Of a stretch of 64,000 nt of DNA, positions 7,119-43,252 are shown piece after piece (position 1 is the first letter of the stretch; the number at the start of each line of letters is the position of its first letter). Origin of the DNA: Octopus bimaculoides (taxonomy: Eukaryota); the NCBI RefSeq assembly GCF_001194135.2, contig NC_068998.1, positions 54,918,534 through 54,982,533 of the forward strand, written 5' to 3'. The notes beneath the pieces are model-generated. The model was given only the letters and a program-made list of their open reading frames with translations. It was not told where the DNA came from and ran no database searches. The position numbers were made by a program, and so were the translations under genes.

Positions 7119-7302
7119 ACTTTGAATATATTCCAGAATATTTAACTTGGACATAATTATGTGACCCTAACTCTAATCACCGTTGGATTGTAACTACTCT
7201 ATTCGGATATTACCTGTATATGATCCAGCCTTTGCTAGAGGAATGGCTATCCTTACTACTTGTGAAATTTAAAGTCAGATGTGCCTGGATTATCTAAAAA
7301 CA
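7119..7302 (+). other. 5' UTR portion of the first coding exon of prune
   Basis: Strong acceptor (T)12-CAG ending at 7118, and an in-frame TAA at 7270-7272 upstream of the start. This implies a further non-coding exon upstream; one candidate donor is CAG|GTAAGC at 4967/4968. Confidence 0.6.
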
Positions 7303-7338
7303 ATGGAAAGTTACCTTGTACAAGCTCAAGAGGATTTG
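7303..7338 (+). CDS. PRUNE1: prune coding exon 1 (MESYLVQAQEDL)
   Basis: ATG in context aaaaacaATGG, with donor TTG|GTGAGT (phase 0). Resembles the human N-terminus MEDYLQGCRAALQ. An alternative in-frame ATG at 7279 would add MCLDYLKT. Confidence 0.8.
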
Positions 7339-10024
7339 GTGAGTATTCTTTTGTCTTTTGATTTGGATATTTACAGAGGAAAGATTGATTGCCATAAAAG
7401 GAACTTTTACTTGTAAAATATCGCAAAGGAAAAAAAAAAAAAAAAGAAAACTCATTTTTTAAATAACTTATTCCGTTGCAAATTATAATCACAACCACTG
7501 ATGCTAAGGGTCTGAATCACGAGGTCATGAGTTCAAGTTCTGTTACAAGCATTATTTGATTCATAAGAAAATCACATTACTCTACTTGCCTCAGAATACC
7601 TGACTGATAAAACAGTTCCAGTTCCTTAATTAACAGTTTGTTAGTGATAGGAAGAGTATACAACTGTTAAACCAATTATTCAACAAATATGCAAATGTTC
7701 ATTTTACAACAACCATCACACCCACATATGTTCCATTCCTAATTTCAGTGAAATTACCAAGAATAAAATCCAAAATTTTCAAGTGTCTTAAAGCCAATAC
7801 CCTGAAAGGTTTGCCAAGAGAAATGATTTCATTTTCAAATTCTAATACTGTTCATACATTAGCAATCTTTTGGCACAATCTAACATTTTTCTTAGATTAT
7901 ATTAGAAGATAGAGAAGTATTTTAATTTTCTATTTTTAAATTCCCTTTTTGATGCAGTCACTGTGTTCATGTCTTTTGCCAAATTCATATTTCTTCTACA
8001 AAAATGGCAAGGAATTAGTTGAATGTCCATATTGTGTAGTGATGATGGGTAAATCAGTCAACTTTATTGGTGTTAACTCTTTCATTACCTACTTTGCCAC
8101 TTCTTTTGTTTCCCATCTCTACTTTGTTTCTACCAGTTTTGACTATAGGCACAGGTGTCGCTGTGTGGTAAGAAGCTTGTTTCCTAACCACATAGTTCTA
8201 GGTTCAGTCTCACTGTGTGGCACCTTGAGCAAGTGTCTTCTACTATACAGCCTTGGGCCTACCAAAGCCTTGAGAGTGGATTTAGTATGTGGAAACTGAA
8301 AGAAACCTGTCGTGTGTGTGTTTCTGTATTTACCTCGCCCCCCCCCCCTGCTTGACAACCAGTGTTGGTTTGTTTATGTCCCCCATAACTTAGCAGTTTG
8401 GCAAAAGAGACCAATAGAATAAGTACCAGTCTCGGATTTGTAACCATTGAAGAATATTTTTTTTCAAAATGATTTTTATACTTTGAGACAATATTTCCCT
8501 AATTTCCCTCGACAGTAGTGTATCAATGGTAATGACCAAGAATTTAATATCCAAGGGAAACGGAACACGAAATGTATTGATATGTCCTCCTGTTGATGTA
8601 TCTCATGGTTTCTTTGGAAGTGAGCCATTCATTGACAAAATGTCAGCATTTCCATTATTTCTCCTGGGTCGCATGATGGAAATGAGATTATACTAAAGAA
8701 CAGAAGAAGGCTAATGGCTTCTGCATTATCATTGTTAATAGAGAATACCTATATAGATGTACTATATAGAATACCTATAAATGTACCTCACTTTCTTATT
8801 CAAGTTGAAGATCTCGAGTATTATTCTCTGAAACCTGACTGGCACCTCTTACTGCCTCAAGAATATTGCACTGGTACAGTCCTTATGTGCCTAACCTCTC
8901 ACCTCATCACGTTTTTGCAATCATTAACCAGTCTCCCCTGGATGACACTACACTGTTCACAGTTGTTACTTGCTTTATTTCAATTCGACATCATATATGT
9001 CTGGTGGTTTAAACTTTTACTCTGACCTTGCTATTCCATATCTCGTCTCTTGTTAATTGATTTAAAAGTATGATCCAAATCTTTGATTACAACTCTTTCA
9101 CATCGATTCATTGTTCATTCATATCACATATCTATATTCTTGTCTGTTCACTGTAAATTAGACTATATATGTTTATTTGTGTGTGTGTATTACACACACA
9201 CACAAACACACACAAACACAACACACATAATATTTACATAACTTTTTCAGTTTACTTAGCAGCCAAATTTTCATGGCACATCATACAAATGATGCTCAAT
9301 TTTCTCTCTCCATCATTTGCCAATAATTCACTTTCTTCCCTATATTTTCATACCATTCCACCTCTACTTAACCTTATTTATGTCTCTCTTTTTTTTTTTC
9401 TTTCTTCATATATGAAGAGAGAAAACCTTTTGTTGTCAATATAATTAGTACTTATCAAATCTTCCTTTAACTCTACTACTAAATATGTCATGTAAAATCC
9501 AGAAATGTGTAATTATCTACTTCTTCCATACTTTACTATTACTTGGTGTTTATTTATTTATTTTTTTAATTCTGAACTCGTTAAATGTGGCCTGATTCGC
9601 TCATTTGATCCATTCAGGACTTGAACCATGTCACCACCACTCACTTCCTCCTAAGCTTGTATAAGACAGAGTGTGCGATTCTGGCAACAAGCACTAAATC
9701 AATAGCTGCAGAGTAGAGTTGTCTCTTCTCTTCCAATTGTCTCACCAATCATATGATTGTGATTTCACAAGTCGCTGCAAGCCCAAACTGCATCTAATAT
9801 TATAACATGAAAAACACTCACTTCAAAATGGCTTTAGTAAATAGGATCCATTCAGATTTCTATATTGGATCTTGTTTTTAATTGTAGAAAGTTTCCTTTT
9901 CATTAACAATTATTTTTATCAATTTAGATGTAATGTGCAATGGGTTGGTAAATAGAAAAGATATAATATTACTTTTCAAGGAATGAAGTGACTGGTTACA
10001 CAATTCCATAGCCCTGAGTAAATG

Positions 10025-10095
<71 letters not shown>

Positions 10096-13000: not shown

Positions 13001-16000
13001 ATTGGACATAAAAATTTCAACAGAGCAAAATGTATGGGAATTGGAATAGTGAGGCAAATAAAAATTTCAATTAGGGATTCTTAAAAGAGTAAATTTCATT
13101 TAAGTTACACCAGAATGTGATTGATGTTGATTGCTGTAAAATGATTTGATTGATGAAGCACAAGAGACTTGGAATGTTTGAGACACATTGCAACTGTTTA
13201 ATTGAAAAGAGAAATATTGTGTTAACAAATTTGAAATAATTTATGACAACAAAATTAAGTTTAGAAAATAAGTATTATTTATGTAAAGAGCTCGCACTGG
13301 CTCAGGTAAAAGCACTTTAATATGTTATGAAGAATGACACTGATATCTATTGAGGTTTTTGACAATGGAAATATTTATTTCTTTTTGTATAAATATAAAA
13401 AGATGTTACTACAAACGACAAAACATCAAGAGAATTGAAGATGATTATTCTTGAACTGGTGTGTATGTAGCTGCAGTCAAAACATTAGCTGGTCATTGTG
13501 TGTTGCTGTTTCCATTTGTCCATTGTGGTTTGCTGTTGATTGTGCTACTGTCTCTTGTTTGCTGTCTGCTCGTTGCTTTTGTGTTGATTTAATGCTTTGG
13601 CCAGCTGCAGTCTTTTTTGACTGATGTCAGTGGGATTCACTGTGCTGAATATATAGGAGTGATTTGGCTCAGAAAGAAGCATGCCAAGATGACATTGTTG
13701 TTGGAGCTGATTCCAAGTGAAGTCTTGGTTGGTCAGATTTTTTTATGATATAGATAGTATTCTAGCAAATCACAAAATCAGATATAGGGATCTGTTTGCT
13801 AAATATTCCTGCTCCAAATATTCTGTTTTAAAGATTGAAGAATATTCATTGAATGCATTAAGAAAAAAGTGGAATGTAAATTCATTTGAAAGAGATAAAG
13901 CTATTTATAATTCAGTTCTGTTTATTATGGAAACAATGCATTTTGACAATTTGGTGTCTCTTAGCTTTTTAAATATGTTTAAACGTGGTCAATATATGAT
14001 AAATATATTTTCTATTTTTACATATTTAATACGCCTAATAAAGATGTAAAAGAGAGTGCAAGATCAAATAATTATTCTTTTTGCCAATGATTTTTTAAAA
14101 AATGTAATTATTGTTCAAAAATCTTATTTTGCCAGGCTCATCTATTTGATTATAAAACTGTACATGTTGTTTTGGGAAATGAATCAGCTGATCTGGATTC
14201 TGTGATTTCATCTCTAGTTGAAGCATTTTATTTGTCTCGAGTGAGTATTATTTCATGATTGTTTCATTGTTTGGAGGACTTTTAGCTATAAAAACAGTTA
14301 TTTTTGTATAGGACAAAATTTTCAACAAAGTGTAAATGTAACAGAAGTAAAATAAAAGTCAAAATAGAATGGAAAATGCTTAATTTGATAAATATTAAGA
14401 AAAATATTTTTGATTTTTGTTCATCAAGAAAGACAAAAAAAGCAAATGTCTGATCTGTCATACAATCTTTTCATTAACTATAAGATTTTTCTATTAGCAT
14501 TTCTGAGAAAAGATGCTGCTCCAGTATGGCTGCAGTCACATGACTGAAACAAGTAAAAGAATAAAAGAATATATATATAATGTATGAATTAATCTTTAAA
14601 AATGGATATTTCACATAACTTTAAAAGAAAAAAATAAAACTCCAGGAATAAAAACATTTTAGTTCTTTAACTACATACCAGGTGTCTCTTCTGAATCTAA
14701 AAAGTAAAAAACTATTTTTCAATGATTTCAGTCTCCCCTCTAAAGATGATTACAAGTAGATTTTTTTCAGTATCACACCCAAATAATGATCTACAAATTT
14801 TGCAAAAAACCAACAAAATACAACATAATCACAATGTCAGGCTAAAAATGAACAAAGGAAAATGTAGGATTTTTTTTTTTTTTTTTTGCAGAGTCATAAG
14901 TGGATGACTTGAATAAAAGATACTGAAAATTCTGAGTAAATTGAATTAAGTACAAAATGGCTTTTTTTTTTTTTTTTTAATATTTACAGACAAACAAAGC
15001 AGATGATGTGCTTATCATTCCTGTTATAAATATTTGCCGGAGAGATGTCCATTTAAGAAAAACACTGCATCATGTGTTGAAGCAACAAGGAACTCTCTGT
15101 GATGATTTGATCTATCGAGATGATGTTGACCTCCAGAAACTGCATTTTCATCAGAAGCTCAAGCTGACTCTTGTCGATCAAAATATTTTGCCTTTAAAGG
15201 ATGTTTCCTTGGAAGATTGTGTCGTTAGTGTTATTGACCATCGTCCGAGGGAAAGACCAGAGTCCAGGTAAGAGTTAAAGCAATCATTTATATAATTAAA
15301 GAGTAGCATATGTGATTGTATAACCATAACATGTGGTCAACATTCAAGAAATACACTGAGTGTTGTTGGATGGTCATTGTCAACTTAGAAGATGTGTATA
15401 AAGAAGAGAAATGCCTACTAAAAGTATGTATTATTTAAAGTCTGCAATAATGTGTCCATGTATTGAGAAATAAATGTTAGACATTAGGTAAAAATCTTCT
15501 ACAAGATGGTGGTAGAGGTAAGACAGGTTGCTTTGTTGGGCATTAACATCCTGTCAGCACTAAATGACCAAGGAATTATCTTGGAGATAAACTAGTTACA
15601 GATAATTGCAGAAACCAGTTAGAGTGCCTAATTTGAGGAATTGCAAGCACGCTGTGGTGTAATTGGTGACAAATCACCTGGCAAGAGAATAGACACATGG
15701 CTGAAAATCTTGTTAGTGAGTCTCCTTTTCTTTTGTCTTAAATTGGTGTTTGTAATGTCAAGTATGACATGAAACTTCTGTAGATCTTGTTTATGAAAGA
15801 CACCATTGATGACCAATGTTAAATTAATGATTCTTTATGAGGAAATTAACGTAATAATATTTTTATTAATCAATATTTACTGAAAGTAGGTTTTATCAAT
15901 GAAACTATCGCTGTTATATTTGTTAATTATATTTGAGTCCCATCATGATTTAAGGATGATTTTTATTGATTTACTCTCACATGGCCTCTATAGAGAATAT

Positions 16001-16054
16001 AAGCATTCAATGAAGGCTATATATACATATATATATATCCCTATATATATATAT

Positions 16055-16092
<38 letters not shown>

Positions 16093-19000
16093 GGATGACC
16101 ATAAGTTGTTTTAATCATTTCTCATAATAATAATANNNNNNNNNNNNNNNNNNNNNNNNNNNNNNNNNNNNNNNNNNNNNNNNNNNNNNNNNNNNNNNNN
16201 NNNNNNNNNNNNNNNNNNNNNNNNNNNNNNNNNNNNNNNNNNNNNNNNNNNNNNNNNNNNNNNNNNNNNNNNNNNNNNNNNNNNNNNNNNNNNNNNNNNN
16301 NNNNNNNNNNNNNNNNNNNNNNNNNNNNNNNNNNNNNNNNNNNNNNNNNNNNNNNNNNNNNNNNNNNNNNNNNNNNNNNNNNNNNNNNNNNNNNNNNNNN
16401 NNNNNNNNNNNNNNNNNNNNNNNNNNNNNNNNNNNNNNNNNNNNNNNNNNNNNNNNNNNNNNNNNNNNNNNNNNNNNNNNNNNNNNNNNNNNNNNNNNNN
16501 NNNNNNNNNNNNNNNNNNNNNNNNNNNNNNNNNNNNNNNNNNNNNNNNNNNNNNNNNNNNNNNNNNNNNNNNNNNNNNNNNNNNNNNNNNNNNNNNNNNN
16601 NNNNNNNNNNNNNNNNNNNNNNNNNNNTTTCGTGCGGGTGACACGTAAAAGCACCCACTACACTCTCTGAGTGGTTGGCGTTAGGAAGGGCATCCAGCTG
16701 TAGAAACTCTGCCAAATCAGACTGGAGCCTGGTGTTGCCATCCGGTTTCACCAGTCCTCAGTCAAATCGTCCAACCCATGCTAGCATGGAAAGCGGACGT
16801 TAAACGATGATGATGATATAAGGAGCTGGACGGTTTGACAGGACCCAATGAGGCACAAAACTGTATCAGGCCCCAATGATATCAACCTGGGATTTGTACC
16901 AAATGTATAACAGGGGGCAAATAGCAGCAATTTTGTATGGGTGAACCTGCTTCTGATGATTCTGTTTCTCCCCCCCACCATTGCATAATCTCCATACCAA
17001 AACAAACATACAGACAATGCGTCAATGCTCTCCTGTAGCTATGAATGAGTCTTTCAAATTACCTAAATAAAAAAAAAAATCAGTCAGATGGAACAAATGT
17101 AACTAAATAACAAGTTGATTGTTGGGAAGCTAATTAAAAATATTGTCACCAAATAGTATAAATATAATGTATTATAATTATCATAATTTTCTTTTCTAGC
17201 TTGTGTTCAAATAAATATCCTCATTAATGACCTTGCTATCCATTTGGCTACCAGACTAATACTCTAATCTAAATACACTTCAGCTGTTGACTTTTGTCCT
17301 AATTTCACTTATAATTAAGCATGTGTACAACTTAACTACAAATGATATATAGAACAAGAGATTCCAGTTGGCTATTGAATATTTTCTTTTTAGTTTTTTT
17401 CATTGAAAATGGTATTGAAACTAATTTATCGTTTGCATAAAAACCACACACACACAGCTGTCATAATTCAGTCTTGCAAAATCCATCTTATTAAACCTGT
17501 AAAATGAAAGCATATTACTGATGTGACCCCAAAAGCTTATCAACTTGTTAATGCTTCGTTCTATAAGAGGCGGAAGCCCTCTTAAATGGCATCAACACAA
17601 CAACAGTCTGCGTAAAGTCTTATAGTTTCTAAGATTCACATGGTTTCCATAGAAGGATGTAAGGTACTCTACAGCACTGTCATCATTAGAGATTTCATAA
17701 TCCTTGCTGGTTGTAGGTTCACTATTGAGGAATTAGTCTTTGCATGATGATTCTCAGAAAGAAAACTCTAGGATGGTTCCACATTGACCTCTAGATAATA
17801 GGCCGTTTGTCAACATGACAAATTCTGCTGGTTAAATAGCAAGTTGTTCCTATTCGGAGGTACCTATTTACAGGTTGAAGAGCTTGATCATTTTCAAGTG
17901 TCCTGGCTTTGAATGTAATACAGTGTTGAGGATAATATTTGGAACCCCATCCTCAGCTGCTGATCACTGCCCTGTCCACTTAGCCATCCATGCTCTCAAA
18001 CCCTGTATTGATGGTGAGACTGAGGTCATCTGTAAATGTAGGATTTAAAAACTGAGTTTCTGCAGAAACAGTAACCAAGGTGTTTTAAAAATGTGGGGAA
18101 AAGTATTAAAAATGAGAGATATCTAAACAATTCAGCAATTATGAAATATTAATTCAATATTCAGTTCATTTTATGAACAAGATATCCATTTTCCTGAAGT
18201 CATATTAATTTCTGATTATTCAAAAACAATTTTCATTATTGATATCTTTATCATTTGACGTTTCTTTCCTAATATTTCTGTTTAACCGATTCTTCCACTC
18301 TGGTCTAAAAAATGAGTTTAGTGAACTAGATTTAGAAAGTAGCATTGTTTTGACCATACTACAAAAAAATGGTGATGCAATTTCAAAAAATAAGAGAAAT
18401 GGAATTATAGTTTTCTTTGTCTGTTACATTGCTAATTATAGTGATAGGATCAGCACCACCACTGCTGCCACCACCACCACCATTCGTTATCAGTTGAATT
18501 ATTTTGCCTAACATTGTTATTTTCCCACCTCACCCTATCACCATCACAACTACTAGGCTGCTGATAGCGATAACATTGATATAATAGGTTTAATGGAAAC
18601 AGTAACAAAAACAGTAATAATATCGTCAATAACATGTCATTGATGTTATTATTGTTACTATTTCATGTTTTTTCAGCCATTTCCAACATGCATTCATTGA
18701 ACAACTGAGTTTTTTGTTTCTACTTTTACAACTATAAATCAGGAAAGCAACAAAATCTTGTTATGAATCAGCAAAACAGAGGCGTTCTGAGTTCTGATCC
18801 CTGCTTTGAGGCACAAAACAGTAATTGTTAAGGTTTCACTGCAGACCTTAAACTTTGTTCTCGTGTCCCAACAATGCTCATTATTTGAAGTAATAGCAAA
18901 AAAGAAAGAAAAAAAAAGCAGCTGAAGTCTGGACTGTGAAGCAGTGAATTGGCAGTCATTGGACTGTGGCCATGCTGGAGCTCTACCTTTAACAGTTTAG

Positions 19001-22000: not shown

Positions 22001-25000
22001 TAATGATTTTGTGACATCTCTATGAAACAATTTGTTTGATTCTTATGATAATAACGAATGTATTGTATGCAGTGTTCAGGTGCATTACAACTCATCAGAA
22101 AAAGTAGCCAAAGGTGCCTCTGAACAAATACATAGAATATATGCACAGTAAGTGAACAGTGGATTTGTCATTAAGAAACGAAAAAAATGTGGGGGTGCAT
22201 CAGGTGTACTGTTGGTGAGTTTCATGAAGTTTTGAAGGATGCAGGTATTCCATCAGTTAACAGCTGATGAAGGTAGTTTATTCCATGCTTCAGCAATTTT
22301 GAGCATGGAAAAATGTCTCTGAAACTCATGGGTGTTGTGTTTGTCTTTGGATGTTGTAAGCATGTCCATGAGTGTCAGGCATAGAATTGCTCATCTCTGC
22401 ACCATTCTTATTCATGTGTTCTTTCAAATTCCAGTAATTCAAATCACATATTGAGAGCATTCAACCAACCTCATTTGTATAGAAAACATGAAAGAGTTTG
22501 TTTACTTCTGATCACCAACAAAGGATTAAATTGACTTACCATTTGTGTATTTAATTCATTCAATGTCTTTTGGGATCATATATAAATACATAAATTTGTA
22601 TGATTTTAATTTCGAAAGTATAATTTTAAAATTTGAAAAATGTTTAATCTATTTTATTCACTCCATATAATCAGAGCCTATTAATTGTGTGTAACTTTAC
22701 AATTTTGACCATGAATTCTAGGTACCATTATTTTTGATACTATAAATATGAGTAAAGATGCTAAACGTGGAACTGCAAAAGATGAAGAAATATTGCAGCG
22801 CTTGGAAAATATTCTACCAAATTGCAATCGCTGTGATGTTTTTGAACAAATCAATATTGTTAGATATGATATAAGTGGTAAGTAATCGATATACCATTTA
22901 CTATCCGAATGTGTGTTGTGTTATTATTATTATTATTCATTGTTATCGTTATTTTCCAAAGTGATGATCTGGCAGAATTGTTAACACGCCAGGCTGAATA
23001 CATTTTGTCAATCCTTACATTCTGAGTTCAAATTCCACTGAAGTCAACTTTGCCTTTCATCCTTTCAGGATCAATGAAATAAGTACCAGTTATGCACTAG
23101 GATCAATATAATTGGCTAGCANNNNNNNNNNNNNNNNNNNNNNNNNNNNNNNNNNNNNNNNNNNNNNNNNNNNNNNNNNNNNNNNNNNNNNNNNNNNNNN
23201 NNNNNNNNNNNNNNNNNNNNNNNNNNNNNNNNNNNNNNNNNNNNNNNNNNNNNNNNNNNNNNNNNNNNNNNNNNNNNNNNNNNNNNNNNNNNNNNNNNNN
23301 NNNNNNNNNNNNNNNNNNNNNNNNNNNNNNNNNNNNNNNNNNNNNNNNNNNNNNNNNNNNNNNNNNNNNNNNNNNNNNNNNNNNNNNNNNNNNNNNNNNN
23401 NNNNNNNNNNNNNNNNNNNNNNNNNNNNNNNNNNNNNNNNNNNNNNNNNNNNNNNNNNNNNNNNNNNNNNNNNNNNNNNNNNNNNNNNNNNNNNNNNNNN
23501 NNNNNNNNNNNNNNNNNNNNNNNNNNNNNNNNNNNNNNNNNNNNNNNNNNNNNNNNNNNNNNNNNNNNNNNNNNNNNNNNNNNNNNNNNNNNNNNNNNNN
23601 NNNNNNNNNNNNNNNNNNNNNNNNNNNNNNNNNNNNNNNNNNNNNNNNNNNNNNNNNNNNNNNNNNNNNNNNNNNNNNNNNNNNNNNNNNNNNNNNNNNN
23701 NNNNNNNNNNNNNNNNNNNNNNNNNNNNNNNNNNNNNNNNNNNNNNNNNNNNNNNNNNNNNNNNNNNNNNNNNNNNNNNNNNNNNNNNNNNNNNNNNNNN
23801 NNNNNNNNNNNNNNNNNNNNNNNNNNNNNNNNNNNNNNNNNNNNNNNNNNNNNNNNNNNNNNNNNNNNNNNNNNNNNNNNNNNNNNNNNNNNNNNNNNNN
23901 NNNNNNNNNNNNNNNNNNNNNNNNNNNNNNNNNNNNATTTTTATATATTTATCTTTGTTACTGAGGAATAATCTTGTAGAAATTAAGATAATAGTTCAAT
24001 ACTTTAATCAATCAATTTCCTATCATTTAAAAAAAAAAATTTCTTAACTTTCCAAGTTAAATTTTAAGAATTAAATCTAAGAGGACCCTTTATCAGCACC
24101 AGATAAAGGGTGTTCTCCCTTTGTTTAGGTTATTGTTCAAGTATATATAATTGTATCAACCAAATATTTAGATTTTTTTTTTTTTTAAGTATTTTTGCTG
24201 CTGTTTCAGGGGAAAAAGAAAGGCATTGATGGGATTGAAGATGACTGGTAAATCAAACCAAACTCATTTTCTAACAAATGAGTTAAGAATTGATTGTTTG
24301 TTCCAAATTCAGTGCTTTCATTGAGAATACAAATTTTCAGCTCCCTTTTTCATATTTTACATCTTTTCAGATTTTCCTTTTAGTTTTATTTTGTGGACGT
24401 GGACAGATAATTTTGAGTCATTTCCATCCAAATACTGATTTCTTTTTTTGTTTTGTATGGTTTTAGGATTCACAAGTTTGGATATTCTAGAGATGGATTT
24501 GAAAGTTATATCCAAAAATGATATCAATATTCCAATGAGTTCAGTAACAGTACCTATCGAAGTAAGTTGATTTTTAATTAGTGTTGTTTTGATTAAATCA
24601 ACCTTAATCAATTTTAATTATTTATTTTTCAAGAGTGTATCAATTTCTTACACAAATCTGCTGAAAGACTTTGTTCTTAAAATAGTAAAATTTCATTTCT
24701 AAACAGTTACCATTGATTGATAAACAACTTCTAGTGAACCTTGTGGTTATCAACCCTCCTTCAGTCGTTTACCTGCTCAACTTAAATATATTTCACCATT
24801 TGTTCCTTCATCGTTGGAAAAAAATTTTTATAGTCATCATAGAGATTTAGAAAAAATAATGAAACAACTGTATTATTAAGGTTTTGCATAATACTGTGAT
24901 TATCTGGTGGTTTGGACCTCACACTGTGATGACATTGAATGATATATTTACCCCTTGTCATATAAATTTTTACCTCAGCAGGGAAATCCGCTTCTCATTT

Positions 25001-28000
25001 ATCTGCTGCTTTGAGAAATTCCTATTTTATAGTTGATTCGTACATCTAAAGAAGAGTCTTCAACTGCGGAAGCACTTGCTTCAACAATATGAAAACGCAC
25101 AAATTTATGGAAGCCCAACCCATCTGCTAGCATTGAAATCGTTGTTTGCCAAGTAGTTAACAATGAATGTCCAAGAGACAAGGAACTTGCCTCTAACCTA
25201 TCACTGTAACAATAGACATGGCCTCTAAACAAAACCACCAAGTTACTACTGTGTTTCAGTGATGTATAAACAATTTAGTGGCGTCTCTTTAACTTCCAAG
25301 AGTCAAACAGGCAAGTTTATCAGAGTCGCAGGCAAAGCCTTGTCAGTGGATTTAGTAGACAGAAACTGAAAGTAGCCCATCATGTGTGTGTGTGTGTTAC
25401 TGTCCCCTTGCCTTGACTTTGTACAATAATTGTAAACGAATGTCATCATTAAGCAAACGATGCTCTTCACTCCCAGTCTTCTGTGAAAACATGTCTGGTC
25501 AATGGGGGGAAATATTACCTTACTTGGGAACAGGGCATCCAGCCGAAAAAATGTGCCTCAACAAAATTCCATCTGATCCATGCCAGCATGGGAAAGTGGA
25601 CGTAAAATGAGGAACAAGTTCCTTACAGTTTCTATCTAGTTGGATTGGGCTTATAGTTGGAAACACTTACACAAGGTGTCATGCTGTGGGACTGAAACTG
25701 AAACCCTGTGGTTTAGAATCCAACTTCTTAATCACACAGCCATGCCTGCACCTATACAAATCAGTAAAACAGATATAGAATTGATATAAAAAAATGGGGT
25801 TGGTATAACTGACTAAAAAAACAAAAAGAGAAGGAAAGAAAAGCCTTAAAGGCAGCGGCCCAGCATGAAAGGCAATGACTGAACTAAATAAAAGAATCTG
25901 TTGAATTAGAAGGTATATTTTCTGTAATCCTTCTAATCTTGCTTAGAATTATTGATTCTAAGCAGGGTTAAACAGAATTATTCATTCTGTTTAAGCCAAC
26001 TATCATTTTGAATATTAAATTCCATTCAGTTTTTAAATAAATTTAAAATAAAATAATTGAGGTTTAATGGTCGAGGTTTGTCTATAATTTAATTTTCGTT
26101 TTTAATTGTAGGATCTCATTAAAAGGGATGACTTTGAAAGCAGTTTGTATAAATTATCAGAATTACATGATGCTAAAGCGCTTGTTATATTGTGTATGGT
26201 CATGTTGAATAAAGAGAACGTGAAACGAGACCTTGCTGTTTTCTCAACGTTTAAACCAGCACTTGATAAGGTATGTCTAGCATTTCTCTCTAAATATATG
26301 GAATTATTGTTTCAAAAATTATGATGATGATGAGGTTTTCTTTGAATTACAACTTTTGTTGTGTTATTCACATTGTGTTATTTATACAGTCCAATCTTAT
26401 TACAAAATTTGAAAATAGTAAACTTAATTTTTTGAATGTAACTTTAATATGTCGAAATCAAATGACATATACCTGAAAGGTGTTCAATAAAATTGTGGGT
26501 GGGGTGAGAAATCATTTGTGAAAATATTTCAATGGCCAGCCAGGACAATGTTCTAATTTCTATAATTATTACCTCTGTCTTGGTGAAGCTGGAAATATTG
26601 TTTTCAGTCATGTTTGTTTGTCCATGGACCGCTGGATGGATTTGGATGAAACTTTTAGGGATGTGTAGCCTCCTGCTTGGTACGAACTGATGAGATTTTG
26701 GGATCGATCCGATACCGGACAAGGATTCTGGATTATTTGTTATATTTACTTTACATGATTACGGTTTTACGTTGACTTTCAAGTCTTTCTCAATTATCTC
26801 CCTTTAGGCTGTTTCCAAAGTTTTATTTTCATTTCTCTATTATTCATTTTACTCGCATCTCTATCTTAGTAGAAACTGATGGATAAAGAAATCAAACTAC
26901 ACAAACAAATGGCAGCTAAAACAGTTAAGAAATTAAATAACACTAACATATTTTTATATATATATTATATATTATACATACATATTAACATTTGACAGTA
27001 TACTTACATATATACATACATCTATACATTGATCTAAAACAACAGGAATACTAAAGAAAGGCCGGAATTTAAGAGAAGAGAAAAACCAAAAGGTCTTATG
27101 CTACTCATTTAAAAATTTCTGATTAGAACCTATTATTATTACCTCCACATTTGAAACTATTTTAAATGGTGAATTTCTGAACTTTGGTTTTGTATTAGAT
27201 AAGGATAAACTATTTCTTATTGTTACTAAATTTTCTACAGCCACCTTCACATTCCATGACCACCACTGGGATCAATCACGTACCGGACAAGGATTCTGGA
27301 TTATTTTTCCAGTTTTTTTTTTACTTAATTTTTGAGAGCTGCCATGTTCGTTCTGACTATTCTCATTTGTGAAGAAGTTGAGTTTATTTCCGATATTCTC
27401 ATTTTAAAAATCATCTCTGGCTAATCGTTGAGAGGATGTTGGTGTTGCCTTGGCAGAGGTTTGCGCTCTCTCTCAGTGCTCTTGCTTATTATTATTATTA
27501 TTATTGATTTCAAGAACTTAAGTAAATTTGTTTGAAAATTCCTTTTGACAGCAAATGGAAACTCATATTTTATTTTGTATTTCTTTTTAGATAGTGGATG
27601 TGTTGTGTAGTAGCAGTGAGCCATCTTTGCAACTTGAAAGAATTCCTTATGAATCAACCAATTTAACAATATTTTCACAAAAGAATATCGTAATTGCTCG
27701 TAAAAAAGTGCTTCCAATACTAAAATCTCTTATCTCTAATGAAGATTTTTCTAGGTAAGATGACTCCTACAGGTTTAGCATGAGATCAATATTTTCTTAA
27801 AATCAGTAATGATAGAAATTATGCTTTCTAATTGGAATTTTGTGACTTGTGTATTAACTTTGATTACAGTTTTCATCTTCCAAAATTGATGTAAAATTTA
27901 ATGGAGAAATAAATTTGATGTTGAAGGCAAATATTGTGTAAAGTTGAATTCTTTCATATATGAAATTGCTTCAATTCTTTTCATCCATGTTAGAAAATAT

Positions 28001-31000
28001 ACTTTCATTTAAAACTGTCATTATATAAATTGACATTTTGCAAAATCTACCTTTTAATAATAGTGATGATGATGATGATGATGATAATAATAATGATGTG
28101 CATTTCAAATTGATTTCTGAACCAATCATGTTATGACTAAATTTCAAATAGATTTTTATTTTTGTTGCTCTGAAATTATCCATTGATTCTATCATTTGCT
28201 TAAAAGAATATAGATTTTTGGGGAATGACTATTATTTTATTACTTGTTATAACTTGAATAATCTGTATAATATATGTTAAAAACATTGTCTGATCCACAA
28301 CATACCAATTGTTGTTGTATCTCCAAAACAAGAAGTATCAGCTTTCATTTTTAAAAGTTCTTCCATGTCTGATCTTTTTTTCTATTTGTTGATACAAAAG
28401 AAAATTTGTCTTGTCTGTTCATAATAGTTTAAAGGTGAAAGAAACAGAAGTCAATTATTTTAATCAACTATTTTAGATATGCTATTAAACTATTAATTTG
28501 TTTTTTTTCTTTCTTCTTTTTTTTTTGTCTTTTATTTCATCAGGCTCTTTGAGAATCCAGACCAAATCAATGGTGCTAGACAGGATGGTGAATTGGCATC
28601 TGGTGGCATTGCAGGTGTTATTGAAGATAATATGAAGCATGGGAATAAATATAGTGACAGTGCATCATCATTAAGTGGTACTTCTATGAGTGGTACTGAT
28701 ACATCCACCGAAATGTATGAGACCTTCAGTCCGACTACAAATATCGATCAATCTGCCATGCAAATTGATAATGCTGTTTTCGTATCTAAAATGCAAACAA
28801 AACCTGATGCTGCTGACCATAATAATTCTCACATTGTGTTAGCAAATGTTGATAATTCACTCAATGACAGTGAATACAATTCCACAGTTGATAACATGCA
28901 TTTCTTAAATAAGCAACATAATGTTGACAATATGGTTTGTATGACAAGTGACCAACCTCTTATTACTGTTGGTACCGAGAAGGTAATAGTGCATCCTGAA
29001 GCATCTTCTGGTATTGCAAGTCCAATGGAGATTGTATCAGATCAAACTTCAGAACAAGGCTCAAGTTATCCTGTAACACCACCAAATAGCTTCATGGACT
29101 CTAATTTTGGAAGTTATATGAAAGATTATCATTTACCCAGTTTCAATAGTGCTGAGATGGTAAAAAGAATCAATGATAAAAAGGCTTCTCTTCATCCTTA
29201 TGAAGATCTAGAAGTTTGTGGAAGCAACAACAAGAATCCTTCATCAAATTTTCCCTACACACCTCAGAACAGCTTTGTTGAAAGTGAATTTGATAGTAGT
29301 TTTGCTAAATCAATAACTCCTGACAGTATTGAAGATATTTTAGGGAAAATTGACGAGGCAAATAATCATTCGAGAGCTGCTATCAACCCTGATTATGCAA
29401 AGCGGTCCAACGGAGAAAACATTGGTTTTCATTGTTGTTCTGATTTTGAAACTGAAACAGTTAGTGAACCTATAGATACGAACAATATTGTGGATGTTGC
29501 TTATTCCTTGGCAAATGAAATCATTCAGAACTCGCTGGAAACTTATCCTTGTGAAGATAAATTAAATGAAAGTCTAGAGGGGGAGGAAAAGCGATTAACT
29601 CCCCTTGTTAAATCTCGGAGTGAAGGTACAACTATCGATTTGTCAATCAAAAGTGAATGTCCGAAATCCCAAAGTGATGTTATAAATTTGTCAAACGTCC
29701 TTGAAACAGACTATGCCAGACAGTTTGATCCATTCAATGGTAGAATGGAATATTCTCATTTCTCCTTAGATTATGCTGATTACATGGCAAAAAGAGGAGT
29801 TGCAGAAAGTGCTTCGAAAATCAGTTGGGGCTCATACTCTGATGATATTACAGTGAGTTCAGAGAGCACGAAATCCGAGGAAGGAGTTCACGTGAAAAAA
29901 TCTGAATCTTGTGACAGTAAAACTAAAATTGTCATCGATAGTAAAATCAAAAGCTCCAATTCATTACCTGAAGTATCATTACAAAGTTTCCCTAAAATCA
30001 TTAAACCACCTGAAAGTATTCTAAGCAGTATTGATGACAACCTTTCTGATTTGACGACTGTATCCCCTACGAAAAGTAATCTTGCTCATGATATTTCAAA
30101 CAGTGATATGGAAGGGGAATTAGCCGTTGAAGAAGATTCTGATCTCGAAGACGGGGAGAAAGATTTTGCTGCCCAATTAAGGGAAAAATTAACGCAAATT
30201 GGGAATAACAGTGAGTTGAATTTTCCTGGGTTCCAGCAGGAAGGTATTTTTTCTCCAGAAGAATTAAAATCTGGAATCAAGAGAATGAGTAATTTAAAAA
30301 CCTCTGATTTCAATCAAATTGCTAATTTCTCTGCTGAAGATTTACGTGAGAAACTGGAAAAGATTGCACTTGATGAAAATGGTGCTGTGGGTGGGTTGCG
30401 AGACTTTAATGCATATGACAGTGATTCCGATTCAGAAACTAGTTTAACTACTTTAGAAGGCAACCTGCATGCAAATGAATCTGCTAGTCTTTCTCCAAGA
30501 CCTTTAAGTAGTGGGTTGATGGAAATTATTGAGGAAAATGAAGAAGATGATGATGATGAAGAGAATTGTGAAGAAGTTGTTTCAAAAGTTTCTGAATCTT
30601 TAAAGTCATTCCAAAATGAGAACATATCACTATTTAATAAAACGCCTTTGCAAGACAATGCTCTAAGTTCTCATGAAAATATAGAGGCTTCTCTGCAATG
30701 TGAAAGTAATGTTGGGACAAGTAATGAAAGTAAAGTTAAACCAGAACCAGTAGTTCTTCGGAGACATGGAAACAACAAAGAAGTATTTCATACAACAGCC
30801 GGAAGGATTAGTATTTCTATCGACAGTACAGCAGGGGATCCTTCTTCATCAGTAAACACTGACCGAGAAAGCACAGAAGAAATTGGTATTTTGGATTACA
30901 AACAGACACATCGTGAGGTAGGAGAAATCTTGGCTCGGGTTAAAAGCGCCATTATGCGTGCAGATGCTGAGCTTATGTTGTCGTCGTCTTCGTCCTTATG

Positions 31001-31100
31001 TACTGGTGTGGATGCTTGCTTGCAGGTAAACAGCTTATTGTTGAGTTCAGTTGATTGTTTTTGCTCCATATTTTCAAGCCCATTATTTAAATTTTTTTAA
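7303..31100 (+). CDS. PRUNE1: Prune-family exopolyphosphatase (DHH + DHHA2) with long acidic C-terminal region; spliced CDS join(7303..7338,14136..14240,14990..15267,20446..20561,22722..22877,24467..24561,26112..26270,27591..27754,28544..31025 or ..31100)
   Basis: All introns are GT-AG and the phases chain correctly (0,0,2,1,1,0,0,2). The exons total 3591 nt = 1197 codons to 31025. The translation shows prune motifs VVLGNESADLDS, LVD, IDHRP, VGSCCTL, IIFDTINM, DLK and ARKKVLP in the order found in human PRUNE1 (recalled sequence). PRUNE1 versus PRUNE2 orthology is unresolved. Confidence 0.93.
8148..8429 (+). mobile_element. tRNA-derived SINE, family A
   Basis: A/B-box-like head (gctgtgtggtaag...ggttcagtc), body caccttgagcaagtgtcttc...gaaactgaaagaa, internal (TG)n, and tail gcaaaagagaccaatagaataagtacc. 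Several copies in the window. Confidence 0.8.
10027..10093. repeat. (AG)n microsatellite
   Basis: Directly visible perfect dinucleotide run. Many other (TA)n, (CA)n, (AG)n and (GAT)n runs occur, e.g. ~2691-2745, 6555-6585, 33111-33150, 41722-41760, 62177-62250. Confidence 0.98.
14136..14240 (+). CDS. PRUNE1: prune coding exon 2 (DHH motif I)
   Basis: ccag|AHLFDYKTVHVVLGNESADLDSVISSLVEAFYLSR|gtgagt; 105 nt, phase 0-0. Confidence 0.95.
14990..15267 (+). CDS. PRUNE1: prune coding exon 3 (motifs II and III)
   Basis: tttacag|TNKADDVLIIPVINI...LIYRDDVDL...LTLVDQNIL...VIDHRPRERPES|gtaaga; 278 nt, phase 0-2. Confidence 0.95.
16628..16818 (+). mobile_element. SINE-like retroposon 3' part, family C (aggaagggcatccagctgtagaaac core, (gat)n tail)
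   Basis: Ends ...aacccatgctagcatggaaagcggacgttaaac(gat)n. Related decayed copies at ~5612-5660 (-), 6268-6440 (-), 7490-7670 (+), 49960-50090 (+) and 57030-57180 (+). Confidence 0.75.
17520..18050 (-). mobile_element. Highly decayed RTE-type reverse transcriptase remnant
   Basis: Minus-strand pieces LSLTINT, LQPVNRYL and V.YL..FYG resemble GL.IN..KT, V..F.YLG and LLYG.ETW; many stops and frameshifts. Confidence 0.4.
18945..19258 (-). mobile_element. tRNA-derived SINE, family A (degenerate)
   Basis: Reverse-complement similarity to the copies at 8148 and 47070. Confidence 0.7.
19990..20260 (+). mobile_element. RTE-clade LINE 3' remnant
   Basis: Decayed TW(E)E.A..R..W segment followed by FTCNRCHCCCR*RASLIG(H)MWAC, the C2H2-like tail typical of RTE/BovB-type ORF2. 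Confidence 0.6.
20446..20561 (+). CDS. PRUNE1: prune coding exon 4
   Basis: gacag|(S)GCEVNIEQVGSCCTLIAEQIFNSHQPNTIDEKVAALLF|gtgagt; 116 nt, phase 2-1. Confidence 0.95.
21600..21900 (-). mobile_element. Decayed LINE reverse transcriptase remnant
   Basis: AFHQRNTTTMEQIL...FLIDLQE resembles the RT segment GFR..RST.DQIF...FID..KAFD. Confidence 0.4.
22215..22400 (-). mobile_element. CR1/L2-like LINE 3' remnant
   Basis: Minus strand RHFSMLKIAEAWNKLPSSAV..ASFK resembles the CR1 ORF2 end (FFS.RV...WN.LP..VV...SFK). Confidence 0.45.
22722..22877 (+). CDS. PRUNE1: prune coding exon 5 (motif IV Asp)
   Basis: ttctag|(S)TIIFDTINMSKDAKRGTAKDEEILQRLENILPNCNRCDVFEQINIVRYDIS(G)|gtaagt; 156 nt, phase 1-1. 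Confidence 0.95.
22959..23121 (+). mobile_element. tRNA-derived SINE, family B (truncated by gap)
   Basis: ctggcagaattgtta...ctgagttcaaattcc...ctttgcctttcatcctttcagg...aaataagtaccag; homologous to the copies at 38214, 39104 and 50560. Confidence 0.75.
24467..24561 (+). CDS. PRUNE1: prune coding exon 6 (start of DHHA2)
   Basis: ttttag|(G)FTSLDILEMDLKVISKNDINIPMSSVTVPIE|gtaagt; 95 nt, phase 1-0. Confidence 0.92.
25330..25753. mobile_element. Two adjacent SINE fragments: + strand body/tail (25330-25610) and - strand family A head (25630-25753)
   Basis: Shares gccttgtcagtggatttagtagacagaaactgaaag and gggcatccagcc...catgccagcatgggaaagtggacgtaaaatg with other copies. Confidence 0.7.
26112..26270 (+). 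CDS. PRUNE1: prune coding exon 7 (DHHA2)
   Basis: ttgtag|DLIKRDDFESSLYKLSELHDAKALVILCMVMLNKENVKRDLAVFSTFKPALDK|gtatgt; 159 nt, phase 0-0. Confidence 0.92.
26566..27487 (+). mobile_element. Helentron-associated non-autonomous element (HINE/DINE-1-like), probably composite
   Basis: 5' subterminal repeat acctctgtc (26571) followed by a gttt/gtcc microsatellite. The 3' subterminal repeat ggcagaggt (27452) is followed by a small stem-loop gcgct..agtgc and a TT flank. The core gggatc..accggacaaggattctggattattt occurs twice (~26700, ~27267). Confidence 0.6.
27591..27754 (+). CDS. PRUNE1: prune coding exon 8 (end of DHHA2, RKK motif)
   Basis: ttctttttag|IVDVLCSSSEPSLQLERIPYESTNLTIFSQKNIVIARKKVLPILKSLISNEDFS(R)|gtaaga; 164 nt, phase 0-2. 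Confidence 0.93.
28544..31025 (+). CDS. prune coding exon 9: giant exon encoding ~827 aa of S/D/E/N-rich, probably disordered sequence (PRUNE2-like)
   Basis: Long polypyrimidine tract ending catcag; phase 2 matches exon 8 (AG|G = Arg). Open frame continuous with the 835-aa track ORF. Donor CAG|GTAAAC at 31025/6, or read-through to TAA at 31098-31100. Contains two PxTPxNSF motifs like the PRUNE1 tail. Confidence 0.88.
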
Positions 31101-38095: not shown

Positions 38096-38435
38096 TTTAT
38101 CATCTGAGTTCAAATCCATTTAAGTCAACATTTCATCCTGGATTCCTTAACCAGTCAAGAATTGGGGTTGATAGCCTTGTGCCTAGATCAGGAACTAATT
38201 ATCATTAGTATTAAGGTAGCAAGCTGGCAGAATCATTACGGCAACAAACAAAATGCTTAGCGGCATTTTTGCTATCTTTATGTTTTGGGTTCAAATTCTG
38301 TCAGGTTGATTTTGTTTTATCCTTTCAGGGTCTATAAAATAAGTACCAGTTGAATGCTGGGGTCAATGTAATCAAAAACGCTCATCCTTCAAAATTTCAG
38401 GCCTTGTGTCTTTAGTAGAAAAGATGATTATTATT
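38096..38435 (+). mobile_element. Two tandem SINE family B copies (partial 38096-38200; fuller 38214-38435)
   Basis: Same B-box gagttcaaat/gggttcaaat and tail aatttcaggccttgtg..tagtagaaaag followed by (att)n. Confidence 0.75.
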
Positions 38436-39103: not shown

Positions 39104-39310
39104 AAGTGGCAAGTGGGCAGAATTGTTAGCCCTGCTGGACATTTTGTCCATCATTACATTCTGAGTTCAAATTCCGCTCAGGTTGACATTACCTTTCATC
39201 ATTCAGGGTCTATAAATTATGTAGCAATCAAGCATTGGATTGGATATAATTCAACCAGCCTCTTCCCCGAAATTTCAGGCCTTTTGCCTATAGTAGAAAG
39301 GACTATTATC
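39104..39310 (+). mobile_element. SINE family B
   Basis: ggcagaattgttagc...ctgagttcaaattccgctcaggttgac...aatttcaggccttttgcctatagtagaaagg. Confidence 0.75.
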
Positions 39311-39455
39311 ATAACAAACATTATAATGGACTAGAAAACATTTAGGTTCTGTCGCTACATACACCAGTATCATTTATATTTTTATTGCCTTCTGGAAAGC
39401 ATGAGAGTCAAAACTTCTCGTGTTCCTATCTTATATGTAGACTCATTACTTCATA

Positions 39456-43203: not shown

Positions 43204-43252
<49 letters not shown>

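What the first reader, a model, noticed from the sequence alone, without database searches (positions are those of the whole stretch)
7303..31100. Prune gene combining an apparently intact PRUNE1-type catalytic core with a PRUNE2-type giant acidic exon
Seen in sequence: the residues equivalent to human PRUNE1 D28, D106, D126-H127-R128, D179 and R348 are all present, followed by a 2482-nt single exon of acidic low-complexity sequence. Established (recalled): vertebrate PRUNE1 is a short active exopolyphosphatase. PRUNE2/BMCC1 has a degenerate DHH domain, a multi-kb exon and a C-terminal BCH domain, and human BNIPL (BCH) lies beside PRUNE1. Inference: this invertebrate gene may preserve the pre-duplication state, an active polyphosphatase attached to a large scaffold.
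Basis: partly seen in the sequence, partly recalled or inferred. Interest (0 to 1): 0.7.

Follow-up and report, generated by a model that had tools for sequence, protein, structure and literature searches.

The report
Octopus prune gene, ordinary ancestral form
This is the first 1205 codons of the already annotated Octopus bimaculoides "prune homolog 2" gene, and its mix of an intact phosphatase core with a long acidic middle exon is the normal state in non-vertebrate animals, not an oddity.

Summary
Nine GT-AG exons on the + strand (7279/7303 to 31025) translate without a stop to exactly residues 1-1205 of RefSeq "protein prune homolog 2 isoform X2 [Octopus bimaculoides]" (1595 aa). Both assembly gaps lie inside introns 3 and 5, and no coding sequence is missing. 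All 11 catalytic and substrate-binding residues of the DHH/DHHA2 core are present, and the modelled fold matches yeast exopolyphosphatase PPX1. Exon 9 is 2482 nt and acidic (net charge -78). It is not low-complexity: it is as conserved among cephalopods as the core, is predicted mostly disordered, and carries a conserved P-x-T-P-x-N-S motif that also sits in the vertebrate PRUNE1 tail. The BNIP2/BCH exons are not in the window.

The "pre-duplication" reading holds. In a core tree, vertebrate PRUNE1 and PRUNE2 form one clade (100% bootstrap) and all invertebrate forms fall outside it. The same long architecture with an intact core is annotated in gastropods, bivalves, a brachiopod, ticks, echinoderms, a hemichordate and amphioxus. 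Enzyme activity and the PRUNE1-BNIPL adjacency were not testable here.

The parts
7279..7338 (+). Exon 1. The RefSeq start ATG is at 7279. The conserved start ATG is at 7303 (MESYL...), has the better Kozak context (AAAACAATGG), and is where orthologues begin.
14136..14240 (+). Exon 2. DHH motif I (GNESADLDS, equivalent to human D28/D30).
14990..15267 (+). Exon 3. DHH motif II (LVDQN, D106) and motif III (IDHRP, D126-H127-R128).
16136..16627 (.). Assembly gap inside intron 3. No coding sequence is missing.
20446..20561 (+). Exon 4 (VGSCCTL segment of the DHH domain).
22722..22877 (+). Exon 5. DHH motif IV (IIFDTINM, D179) and the inter-domain linker.
23122..23936 (.). Assembly gap inside intron 5. 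Exon 6 lies downstream of it and restores the frame.
24467..24561 (+). Exon 6 (95 nt). Start of DHHA2, with DILEMDLK (D237/K239 equivalents).
26112..26270 (+). Exon 7. Middle of DHHA2.
27591..27754 (+). Exon 8. End of DHHA2, with ARKKVLP (R348/K349 equivalents).
28544..31025 (+). Exon 9 (2482 nt, 827 codons). Acidic, Ser-rich and predicted mostly disordered. It is under purifying selection and matches no Pfam family.
29055..29201 (+). Conserved module 1 in exon 9: YPVTPPNSFMDS...LPSFNSAEMVKRINDKKASL. It is the counterpart of the vertebrate PRUNE1 C-tail [30 protein letters not shown], which is the Nm23-H1-binding region.
29241..29300 (+). Conserved module 2, a partial repeat: FPYTPQNSFVESEFD.
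30774..30824 (+). Conserved island NKEVFHTTAGRISISID. It is invariant in four cephalopod sequences and recognisable in the bivalve Sinanodonta.
30918..31025 (+). Optional last 36 codons of exon 9. An in-frame alternative donor GAG|GTAGGA lies at 30917/30918, and the equivalent junction is used in Argonauta P0003 and in the cephalopod contig L001.
31026..64000 (+). Intron 9, at least 32,975 nt and running off the window. The exons for P0001 residues 1206-1595 (including BNIP2 and BCH) are not in it.

Best explanation
The region holds the 5' nine exons of the single Octopus bimaculoides prune gene (RefSeq 'protein prune homolog 2'). This gene is the pro-orthologue of both vertebrate PRUNE1 and PRUNE2.

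Shown: it encodes a DHH/DHHA2 phosphoesterase core with every metal-binding and substrate-binding residue of the PPX1/PRUNE1 type. A roughly 830-residue acidic, mostly disordered region follows. That region is under purifying selection and carries short conserved modules, one of which corresponds to the Nm23-H1-binding tail of human PRUNE1. In the annotated protein, BNIP2 and BCH (CRAL_TRIO_2) domains follow, encoded beyond the window.

Inferred: the N-terminal domain is a working Mg/Co-dependent short-chain exopolyphosphatase or pyrophosphatase like human PRUNE1 and yeast PPX1. The disordered linker acts as a docking platform. The BCH end tethers the enzyme to membranes, Rho-family GTPases or the cytoskeleton, as BCH domains do in BNIP-2 family proteins. 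Alternative splicing and alternative ends probably yield forms with and without BCH, plus BCH-only forms.

This is the ancestral bilaterian arrangement. Vertebrates later split it into PRUNE1 (core plus short tail) and PRUNE2 (degenerating core, long linker, BCH).
For: Identity: the window CDS equals P0001 residues 1-1205 with 0 mismatches, and the RefSeq name and Pfam domains are.

Core: DHHA2 scores 51 bits (cut-off 27) and DHH 32.6 bits (cut-off 28.1). Yeast PPX1 (2QB6) matches at E 2.5e-17 with all motifs aligned. The AlphaFold model has pLDDT 90.3, and its best PDB match is PPX1 (E 1.9e-25, TM 0.74-0.76), followed by family II pyrophosphatases. All 11 functional columns are kept.

Exon 9: 50% of residues are invariant across four cephalopod sequences, against 46% in the core. 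pN is 0.244 against 0.269 in the core, with synonymous sites saturated. Mean pLDDT is 41.5, with 702 of 827 residues below 50 and short helices at the conserved islands. The TPxNS motif occurs twice, and at least two copies appear in 5e-5 of shuffles. The motif is present in PRUNE1 of bear, turtle, frog and ray, in shark PRUNE2, and in amphioxus, Limulus, Lingula and bivalves. Human C419 and D422, next to this motif, are reported as Nm23-H1-binding residues (PMC3584926).

Transcript: Logan contig L001 has an uninterrupted 1217-codon CDS running from the core into the linker across ...SEDFSR|LF....

Phylogeny: vertebrate PRUNE1+PRUNE2 form a clade at 100% bootstrap and all invertebrate sequences fall outside it.

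BCH: BNIP2 scores 68.9 bits and CRAL_TRIO_2 95.7 bits in P0001. BCH-only isoforms are common, including a probable cephalopod one (78% identity, unnamed Logan contig).
Against: No enzymatic assay exists for any long invertebrate form in the literature I searched.

Octopus has Q where most homologues have H after the motif II Asp. PPX1 has N there, so this is probably harmless.

The link from exon 9 to the BCH exons in octopus rests on a predicted RefSeq model. Those exons are outside the window, and the genomic record could not be retrieved.

The cephalopod contig L001 ends without BCH, so BCH-less products may be abundant.

The tree is neighbour-joining on 393 columns. Deep invertebrate nodes are weak (8-55%).

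The profile match of the TPxNS module to vertebrate sequences is weak on its own: 4-10 bits against 5.6 for the best decoy.
Confidence: 0.8

Rival explanations
1. The long protein is an annotation chimera. In this view a short PRUNE1-like gene (exons 1-8, perhaps plus exon 9) and an independent downstream BNIP2/BCH gene were fused by the gene predictor.
For: The BCH exons are more than 33 kb away and outside the window. BCH-only proteins of 300-420 aa are common, including a probable cephalopod one. The cephalopod contig L001 and Argonauta P0004 stop after the linker without BCH.
Against: The fused architecture is predicted independently in more than 12 phyla or classes. Contigs from unnamed organisms, too short to contain introns, carry DHH, DHHA2, BNIP2 and CRAL_TRIO_2 together, for example P0016 (773 aa on 3391 nt) and P0023 (1144 aa on 3721 nt). 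Human PRUNE2 was itself first split into two genes and later shown to be one (PMC3765211 abstract). The exon 8 to exon 9 join is seen in a spliced contig.
Confidence: 0.07
2. The core is a pseudo-enzyme. It is kept as a binding or scaffolding module, as is thought for mammalian PRUNE2, and the conserved residues reflect structure rather than catalysis.
For: No activity data exist. The core has degenerated at least twice when attached to BCH: in jawed-vertebrate PRUNE2 and in the horseshoe-crab long forms. This shows the long protein can function without catalysis.
Against: All 11 catalytic and substrate-binding positions are retained in octopus and in almost every long form examined. Where catalysis is presumably lost, exactly these positions mutate (hPRUNE2, Callorhinchus P0097, Limulus P0031, Tachypleus P0038), so their retention elsewhere implies selection for chemistry. 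The fold matches PPX1.
Confidence: 0.12
3. Exon 9 is a functionless, fast-evolving low-complexity spacer or a retained-intron artefact.
For: It matches no Pfam family, is mostly predicted disordered, and linker length varies greatly between taxa, with total protein lengths from about 760 to 3650 aa.
Against: The open frame has a chance probability of about 3e-29. Entropy equals that of the core. It is as conserved as the core among cephalopods and has pN of about 0.24. It has conserved modules shared across phyla. It is present in a spliced cephalopod contig.
Confidence: 0.02

Closest known systems
Vertebrate PRUNE2 / BMCC1 / BNIP-XL
   Same: The overall architecture matches: N-terminal DHH and DHHA2, one very large central exon encoding an acidic disordered region with a PPTPxNS motif, and C-terminal BNIP2 and BCH domains. 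Multiple isoforms exist, including BCH-only ones. RefSeq names the octopus gene after it.
   Different: The octopus core keeps all catalytic residues. Human PRUNE2 (recalled sequence) has lost D106, DHR, D179 and R348/K349. Callorhinchus PRUNE2 has lost D28, R128 and R348, and the Stegostoma PRUNE2-like protein has lost only R348. The octopus linker is about 970 aa, against about 2500 in sharks and mammals. Phylogenetically the octopus gene is not a PRUNE2 orthologue but an outgroup to PRUNE1 and PRUNE2 together.
Vertebrate PRUNE1 (h-prune), a short-chain exopolyphosphatase
   Same: The catalytic residue set is identical, including DHR rather than DHH in motif III. An acidic disordered region follows directly after DHHA2 and contains the TPxNS[LF]V[DE] ... 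LP..SAE.V module, which in human PRUNE1 is the Nm23-H1-binding and helix alpha3 region.
   Different: PRUNE1 ends about 45 residues after that module (about 450 aa in total) and has no BCH domain. The octopus protein continues for more than 1000 residues. Core identity to vertebrate PRUNE1 is only about 35-38%.
Saccharomyces cerevisiae PPX1 (PDB 2QB6/2QB7/2QB8)
   Same: It is the only solved structure found by sequence (E 2.5e-17) and the best fold match (TM 0.74-0.76). GNESAD(L/M)DS is nearly identical, and motifs II-IV and the DHHA2 D-x-K and R-K residues align.
   Different: PPX1 is a stand-alone 397-aa enzyme with DHH in motif III. It has no linker and no BCH domain.
Long prune-BCH proteins of other invertebrates (RefSeq 'protein prune homolog 2-like' or 'uncharacterized')
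   Same: They share the same domain order, the same intact residues and the same TPxNS/LPSFNSAEMV repeats, with 2-5 copies in molluscs and brachiopods. These are true orthologues.
   Different: Only linker length and repeat number differ. Examples are Mytilus at 3509 aa, Sinanodonta at 3655 aa and ticks at 760-1180 aa.

Membership tests
DHH/DHHA2 phosphoesterases, PPX1/Prune subfamily | Motif I D-x-D (human PRUNE1 D28, D30) | tested here: met
   GNESADLDS in exon 2 aligns to PPX1 GNESADMDS.
DHH/DHHA2 phosphoesterases, PPX1/Prune subfamily | Motif II Asp (D106) and motif IV Asp (D179) | tested here: met
   LVDQN in exon 3 and IIFDTINM in exon 5.
DHH/DHHA2 phosphoesterases, PPX1/Prune subfamily | Motif III D-H-H, or D-H-R in prune proteins | tested here: met
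   VIDHRP in exon 3, the same DHR as PRUNE1.
DHH/DHHA2 phosphoesterases, PPX1/Prune subfamily | DHHA2 domain with substrate-binding D-x-K and R-K(-K) | tested here: met
   MDLK in exon 6 and ARKK in exon 8. Pfam DHHA2 scores 51 bits against a cut-off of 27, and DHH 32.6 against 28.1.
DHH/DHHA2 phosphoesterases, PPX1/Prune subfamily | Two-lobed DHH plus DHHA2 fold | tested here: met
   The AlphaFold model has pLDDT 90.3 and pTM 0.87. Foldseek's best hit is PPX1 2QB6/2QB7 (E about 2e-25, TM 0.74-0.76).
DHH/DHHA2 phosphoesterases, PPX1/Prune subfamily | Metal-dependent exopolyphosphatase or pyrophosphatase activity | not testable with these tools
   This needs a biochemical assay. Activity is inferred only from residue conservation.
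PRUNE2/BMCC1-type long prune | Giant single exon immediately after the DHHA2-coding exons | tested here: met
   Exon 9 at 28544-31025 is 2482 nt and is joined in frame to exon 8.
PRUNE2/BMCC1-type long prune | C-terminal BNIP2 and BCH (CRAL_TRIO_2) domains on the same polypeptide | tested here: met
   This is met for RefSeq protein P0001, whose first 1205 residues equal the window translation: BNIP2 68.9 bits and CRAL_TRIO_2 95.7 bits. Caveat: these exons are not in the window, and no octopus transcript was examined.
PRUNE2/BMCC1-type long prune | Degenerate catalytic motifs, as in mammalian PRUNE2 | tested here: not met
   All 11 positions are intact in octopus. The recalled human PRUNE2 sequence retains only D28, D30, D237 and K239 of the 11.
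PRUNE2/BMCC1-type long prune | One-to-one orthology with vertebrate PRUNE2 rather than PRUNE1 | tested here: not met
   In the NJ tree PRUNE1 and PRUNE2 are sisters (100%) and octopus is outside that clade with the other lophotrochozoans.
PRUNE1 (short exopolyphosphatase) | Short protein of about 450 aa ending soon after the acidic tail, with no BCH | tested here: not met
   The annotated product is 1595 aa with BCH. BCH-less isoforms are possible, but they would still be about 1200 aa.
PRUNE1 (short exopolyphosphatase) | C-terminal disordered tail with the PPTPMNSLV[DE] / LSAEAVFEK module (Nm23-H1-binding region) | tested here: met
   Exon 9 holds YPVTPPNSFMDS...LPSFNSAEMVKRI plus a second TPQNSFVE copy. 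The profile link to vertebrates is weak but is bridged by amphioxus, Saccoglossus and a crinoid (E 0.0003-0.0005).

The most novel reading that the evidence does not exclude
The ancestral bilaterian Prune was a catalytically active exopolyphosphatase permanently tethered, through a long disordered docking region, to a BNIP2/BCH membrane- and GTPase-binding domain. After whole-genome duplication the two jobs were separated at least twice independently.

In vertebrates, PRUNE1 kept the chemistry and the NME-binding module, while PRUNE2 kept the BCH end and let the active site decay. In horseshoe crabs, the short 'PRUNE1-like' forms are intact and the long BCH forms are degenerate.

Probability: 0.5. 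Interest if true: 0.45.

Novelty: already known. Interest (0 to 1): 0.22.

Why it matters
The gene itself matters little as a discovery. It is annotated, and its architecture is the rule outside vertebrates.

The wider picture has modest value. Human PRUNE1 (a neurodevelopmental disease and metastasis gene) and PRUNE2 (a tumour suppressor) are studied as unrelated activities. The invertebrate proteins show that the phosphatase, the NME-binding-type module and the BCH domain were originally one polypeptide. This suggests that polyphosphate or pyrophosphate hydrolysis was once localised by the BCH end.

It also corrects an older statement that BMCC1 has no fish, frog or invertebrate homologues (PMC2655648). 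Finally, it gives a natural set of active long forms in which that coupling could be tested.

Tried and rejected
1. I first suspected that the exon for the start of DHHA2 was lost in gap 23122-23936, because joining E5 to E7 shifts the frame and I overlooked it in an ORF list. tblastn with P0001 placed it at 24467-24561, outside the gap.

2. I searched 31026-64000 for the BNIP2/BCH exons with relaxed tblastn and found none.

3. I tried to fetch the genomic record of P0001 and P0002 to see downstream exons and neighbouring genes. Neither is on record.

4. I looked in the window for the alternative terminal exon used by the cephalopod contig L001 (...THRE|MGQTDPKQPSKQD*) and found no match.

5. 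A profile built from protostome TPxNS repeats gave only 4-10 bits on vertebrate PRUNE1 and PRUNE2, near the best decoy at 5.6 bits. The homology of this module therefore rests on the exact motif, its position, and the bridging deuterostome invertebrates, not on the profile score alone.

6. Rfam and tRNA scans of the whole window found nothing.

7. A Pfam scan of ORFs that look like transposase remnants, and of other long ORFs, found nothing.

8. I did not build a BCH-domain tree to test BNIPL against PRUNE2. The top 120 BCH hits were PRUNE2 and caytaxin only, and the BCH exons are outside the window.

9. Five literature searches found no paper on invertebrate long prune proteins or on octopus prune.

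Full report
**What the window is.** The window has 33% GC and six runs of N. P0001 is 1595 aa and has Pfam DHH, DHHA2, BNIP2 and CRAL_TRIO_2. The sequence is therefore octopus genomic DNA, and the gene is already annotated.

**Gene model and the gap test.** tblastn with a recalled human PRUNE1 sequence (a lead only) and then with P0001 located nine exons on the + strand.
- All nine exons have AG/GT boundaries.
- Their 3615 nt translate without a stop to exactly P0001 residues 1-1205, with no mismatch.
- Gap 16136-16627 lies in intron 3, and gap 23122-23936 lies in intron 5.
- The exons flanking the second gap (E5, and what I first took for the next exon, E7) are out of frame with each other. 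The 95-nt exon 6 at 24467-24561, just beyond the gap, restores the frame and encodes the start of DHHA2.
- No residue is unaccounted for relative to orthologues or to yeast PPX1, so the gaps hide no constitutive coding sequence.
- RefSeq starts eight codons earlier, at 7279. Orthologues begin at the 7303 methionine, which also has the better Kozak context.

**The core.**
- With exon 6 included, Pfam DHHA2 (51 bits, cut-off 27) and DHH (32.6 bits, cut-off 28.1) both pass.
- The only solved structure found by sequence is yeast exopolyphosphatase PPX1 (E 2.5e-17). Motifs I-IV and the DHHA2 D-x-K and R-K residues align.
- An AlphaFold model built on 21 sequences has pLDDT 90.3. Its best PDB matches are PPX1 (E about 2e-25, TM 0.74-0.76), then family II pyrophosphatases.
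- In alignments of about 170 homologues, the eleven columns equivalent to human D28, D30, D106, D126, H127, R128, D179, D237, K239, R348 and K349 read DDDDHRDDKRK in octopus, identical to PRUNE1.
- The one local difference is Q for the His after the motif II Asp. PPX1 has Asn there.

**Exon 9.**
- A stop-free stretch of 867 codons at this base composition has probability about 3e-29.
- The product is acidic (145 D+E, 67 K+R) and Ser-rich. Its sequence entropy equals that of the core, and only 8.7% of it falls in low-entropy windows.
- It matches no Pfam family.
- AlphaFold, with a shallow alignment, predicts disorder for 702 of 827 residues, with a few short helices.
- It is not free-evolving. 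Among four cephalopod sequences, 50% of its residues are invariant, against 46% in the core.
- Against a cephalopod contig, its non-synonymous divergence (pN 0.244) is no higher than the core's (0.269), and synonymous sites are saturated.

**Conserved modules in exon 9.**
- BLAST of the linker against non-cephalopod homologues picks out a repeated module, [YF]P-x-T-P-x-N-S-[FY]-[VM]-[DE] ... L-P-S-F-N-S-[AS]-E-M-V-x-x-I-x-x-K-K-A-S-L. Molluscs, a brachiopod and an annelid carry 2-5 copies.
- Octopus has one full copy (window 29055-29201) and one partial copy (29241-29300). Two copies of the core motif arise in 5e-5 of shuffles.
- The same P-P-T-P-M-N-S-L-V-[DE] sits in the C-terminal tail of PRUNE1 from bear, turtle, frog and stingray. 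It also occurs in shark PRUNE2 and in amphioxus and Limulus.
- A profile built only from protostome repeats detects Limulus, Saccoglossus, amphioxus and a crinoid significantly. It reaches only 4-10 bits on vertebrates, so the vertebrate link is an inference from the exact motif and its position.
- In human PRUNE1 this stretch holds C419 and D422 and precedes helix alpha3 (L428-Q439). It is described as the Nm23-H1-binding part of a disordered, negatively charged C-terminal domain (PMC3584926; PMC11156750).
- On this evidence the PRUNE1 tail looks like the first part of the ancestral long linker.

**Transcript evidence.**
- Logan contig L001 is 4455 nt and was recovered from two runs. It carries an uninterrupted 1217-codon CDS that is 59% identical to P0001 residues 9-1037 and crosses the exon 8/9 junction (...SEDFSR|LF...).
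- In octopus these exons span 24 kb, so the contig must derive from spliced RNA. Less likely, it derives from a retrocopy.
- L001 leaves the linker at the position of an in-frame alternative donor that also exists in octopus (GAG|GTAGGA at 30917/30918). It then ends in a short alternative tail without BCH.
- Argonauta P0003 uses the same junction but continues into the BCH region.

**What lies downstream.**
- P0001 residues 1206-1595, including BNIP2 (68.9 bits) and CRAL_TRIO_2 (95.7 bits), have no match in 31026-64000. Intron 9 is therefore at least 33 kb long.
- The octopus BCH region is closest to PRUNE2 and caytaxin among vertebrate proteins.
- BCH-only isoforms of 300-420 aa are common in both vertebrates and invertebrates.

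**How widespread the architecture is.**
- A library-wide HMMER search found 2113 relatives of the core.
- Those that also carry a BCH domain, and that could be named, include Argonauta, Haliotis, Babylonia, Plakobranchus, Pecten, Mytilus (3509 aa), Sinanodonta (3655 aa), Crassostrea, Ostrea, Lingula, many ticks, a mite, a nematomorph, Acanthaster, Asterias, a crinoid, Saccoglossus, amphioxus and chondrichthyan PRUNE2.
- Almost all of them keep the eleven functional residues.
- The exceptions are jawed-vertebrate PRUNE2 and the horseshoe-crab long forms. In PRUNE2 the loss is progressive: Stegostoma has lost one residue, Callorhinchus three, and the recalled human sequence most of them.

**Phylogeny.**
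- I built a neighbour-joining tree of 37 cores (393 columns, 100 bootstraps, rooted on PPX1).
- It unites vertebrate PRUNE1 and PRUNE2 at 100%, with PRUNE2 monophyletic at 100% and PRUNE1 at 64%.
- Every invertebrate sequence, long or short, falls outside that clade.
- Short invertebrate "PRUNE1-like" proteins (Tubulanus, Cherax) do not group with vertebrate PRUNE1.
- Deep nodes are weakly supported, and the method is simple.

**Literature.**
- One paper stated that BMCC1 homologues are absent from frog, fish and invertebrates (PMC2655648). That is now out of date.
- I found no paper on the catalytic state of invertebrate long forms or on the octopus gene.
- The facts are visible in public annotation, but they do not seem to have been discussed in the papers I could search.

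**Verdict.**
- The evolutionary reading is supported.
- The implied unusualness is not supported. This is an ordinary, already annotated orthologue showing the ancestral bilaterian arrangement.
- Function as an active, BCH-tethered exopolyphosphatase is a reasonable inference from residue conservation, but it is untested.

Noticed in passing
window 30917-31025: There is an in-frame alternative 5' splice site inside exon 9 (GAG|GTAGGA at 30917/30918). Using it removes the last 36 codons (VGEILARVKSAIMRADAELMLSSSSSLCTGVDACLQ). The equivalent junction is used in Argonauta P0003 and in the cephalopod contig L001. AlphaFold predicts a helix over this optional segment.
   Followed up: partly
window 46648-46709 and 59831-59916: Two small exons with canonical AG/GT sites lie in intron 9 (62 and 86 nt). 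They are used only by the older UniProt model A0A0L8FIX1 (P0002). They shift the frame to a BCH-less tail and are absent from RefSeq P0001 and from other cephalopod sequences. They are either alternative 3' exons or prediction artefacts.
   Followed up: partly
related proteins P0031, P0038, P0039 against P0044, P0054 (Limulus, Tachypleus): Horseshoe crabs carry long BCH-containing prune proteins with degenerate active sites, plus short 'PRUNE1-like' proteins with intact sites and strong TPxNS modules. The Limulus long form, Limulus short form and Tachypleus short form cluster together at 100% bootstrap. This indicates a lineage-specific duplication that parallels the vertebrate PRUNE1/PRUNE2 split.
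   Followed up: partly
related proteins P0083 (Stegostoma), P0097/P0098 (Callorhinchus): Chondrichthyan PRUNE2 cores are only partly degenerate: Stegostoma keeps 10 of 11 functional residues and Callorhinchus keeps 8 of 11. Loss of the PRUNE2 active site therefore appears gradual within vertebrates.
   Followed up: partly
related protein P0042 (JGI/IMG metagenome, 1615 aa): This is an unusual arrangement. The DHH/DHHA2 core sits at residues 992-1340 and is followed almost directly by a BCH-like domain (1376-1582), with about 990 residues upstream instead of a long linker between them. The source organism is unknown.
   Followed up: no
window 7279 against 7303: RefSeq begins the protein at ATG 7279 (MCLDYLKT...). 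Orthologues start at the methionine encoded at 7303, which has the stronger Kozak context (AAAACAATGG against AGTCAGATGT).
   Followed up: partly
window 2079-2405 (+) and 43303-43751 (-): By eye these ORF fragments resemble Tc1/mariner-type transposase remnants (for example ...QQDSAPCHTS... and ...VPTVKHGDNFVMIWAVISW...). The second lies antisense in intron 9 and is frame-shifted. A Pfam scan of the fragments found nothing, so this is unconfirmed.
   Followed up: partly
window 25639-25730 / 47352-47443; 38342-38438 and 39221-39312 against 55973-56069; 2686-2788 against 43157-43257: These are dispersed repeat copies of 90-100 nt at 72-82% identity, direct and inverted, in the introns. They are probably SINE-like interspersed elements. 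Some abut assembly gaps, which are also flanked by microsatellites such as (TA)n at 16018-16089.
   Followed up: no
P0001 residues about 1365-1385 (outside the window): An acidic tryptophan motif, ...GLEVDWESETP..., lies just upstream of the BNIP2 domain, and the mollusc consensus is ELEWEND. It resembles, from memory, the W-acidic kinesin-light-chain-binding motifs of caytaxin and BNIP-2.
   Followed up: no
related proteins P0003 and P0004 (Argonauta hians): Two Argonauta loci on different contigs encode nearly identical cores. One model has BCH (1589 aa) and the other stops after the linker (1365 aa). This may reflect a recent duplication, haplotigs, or a truncated model.
   Followed up: no
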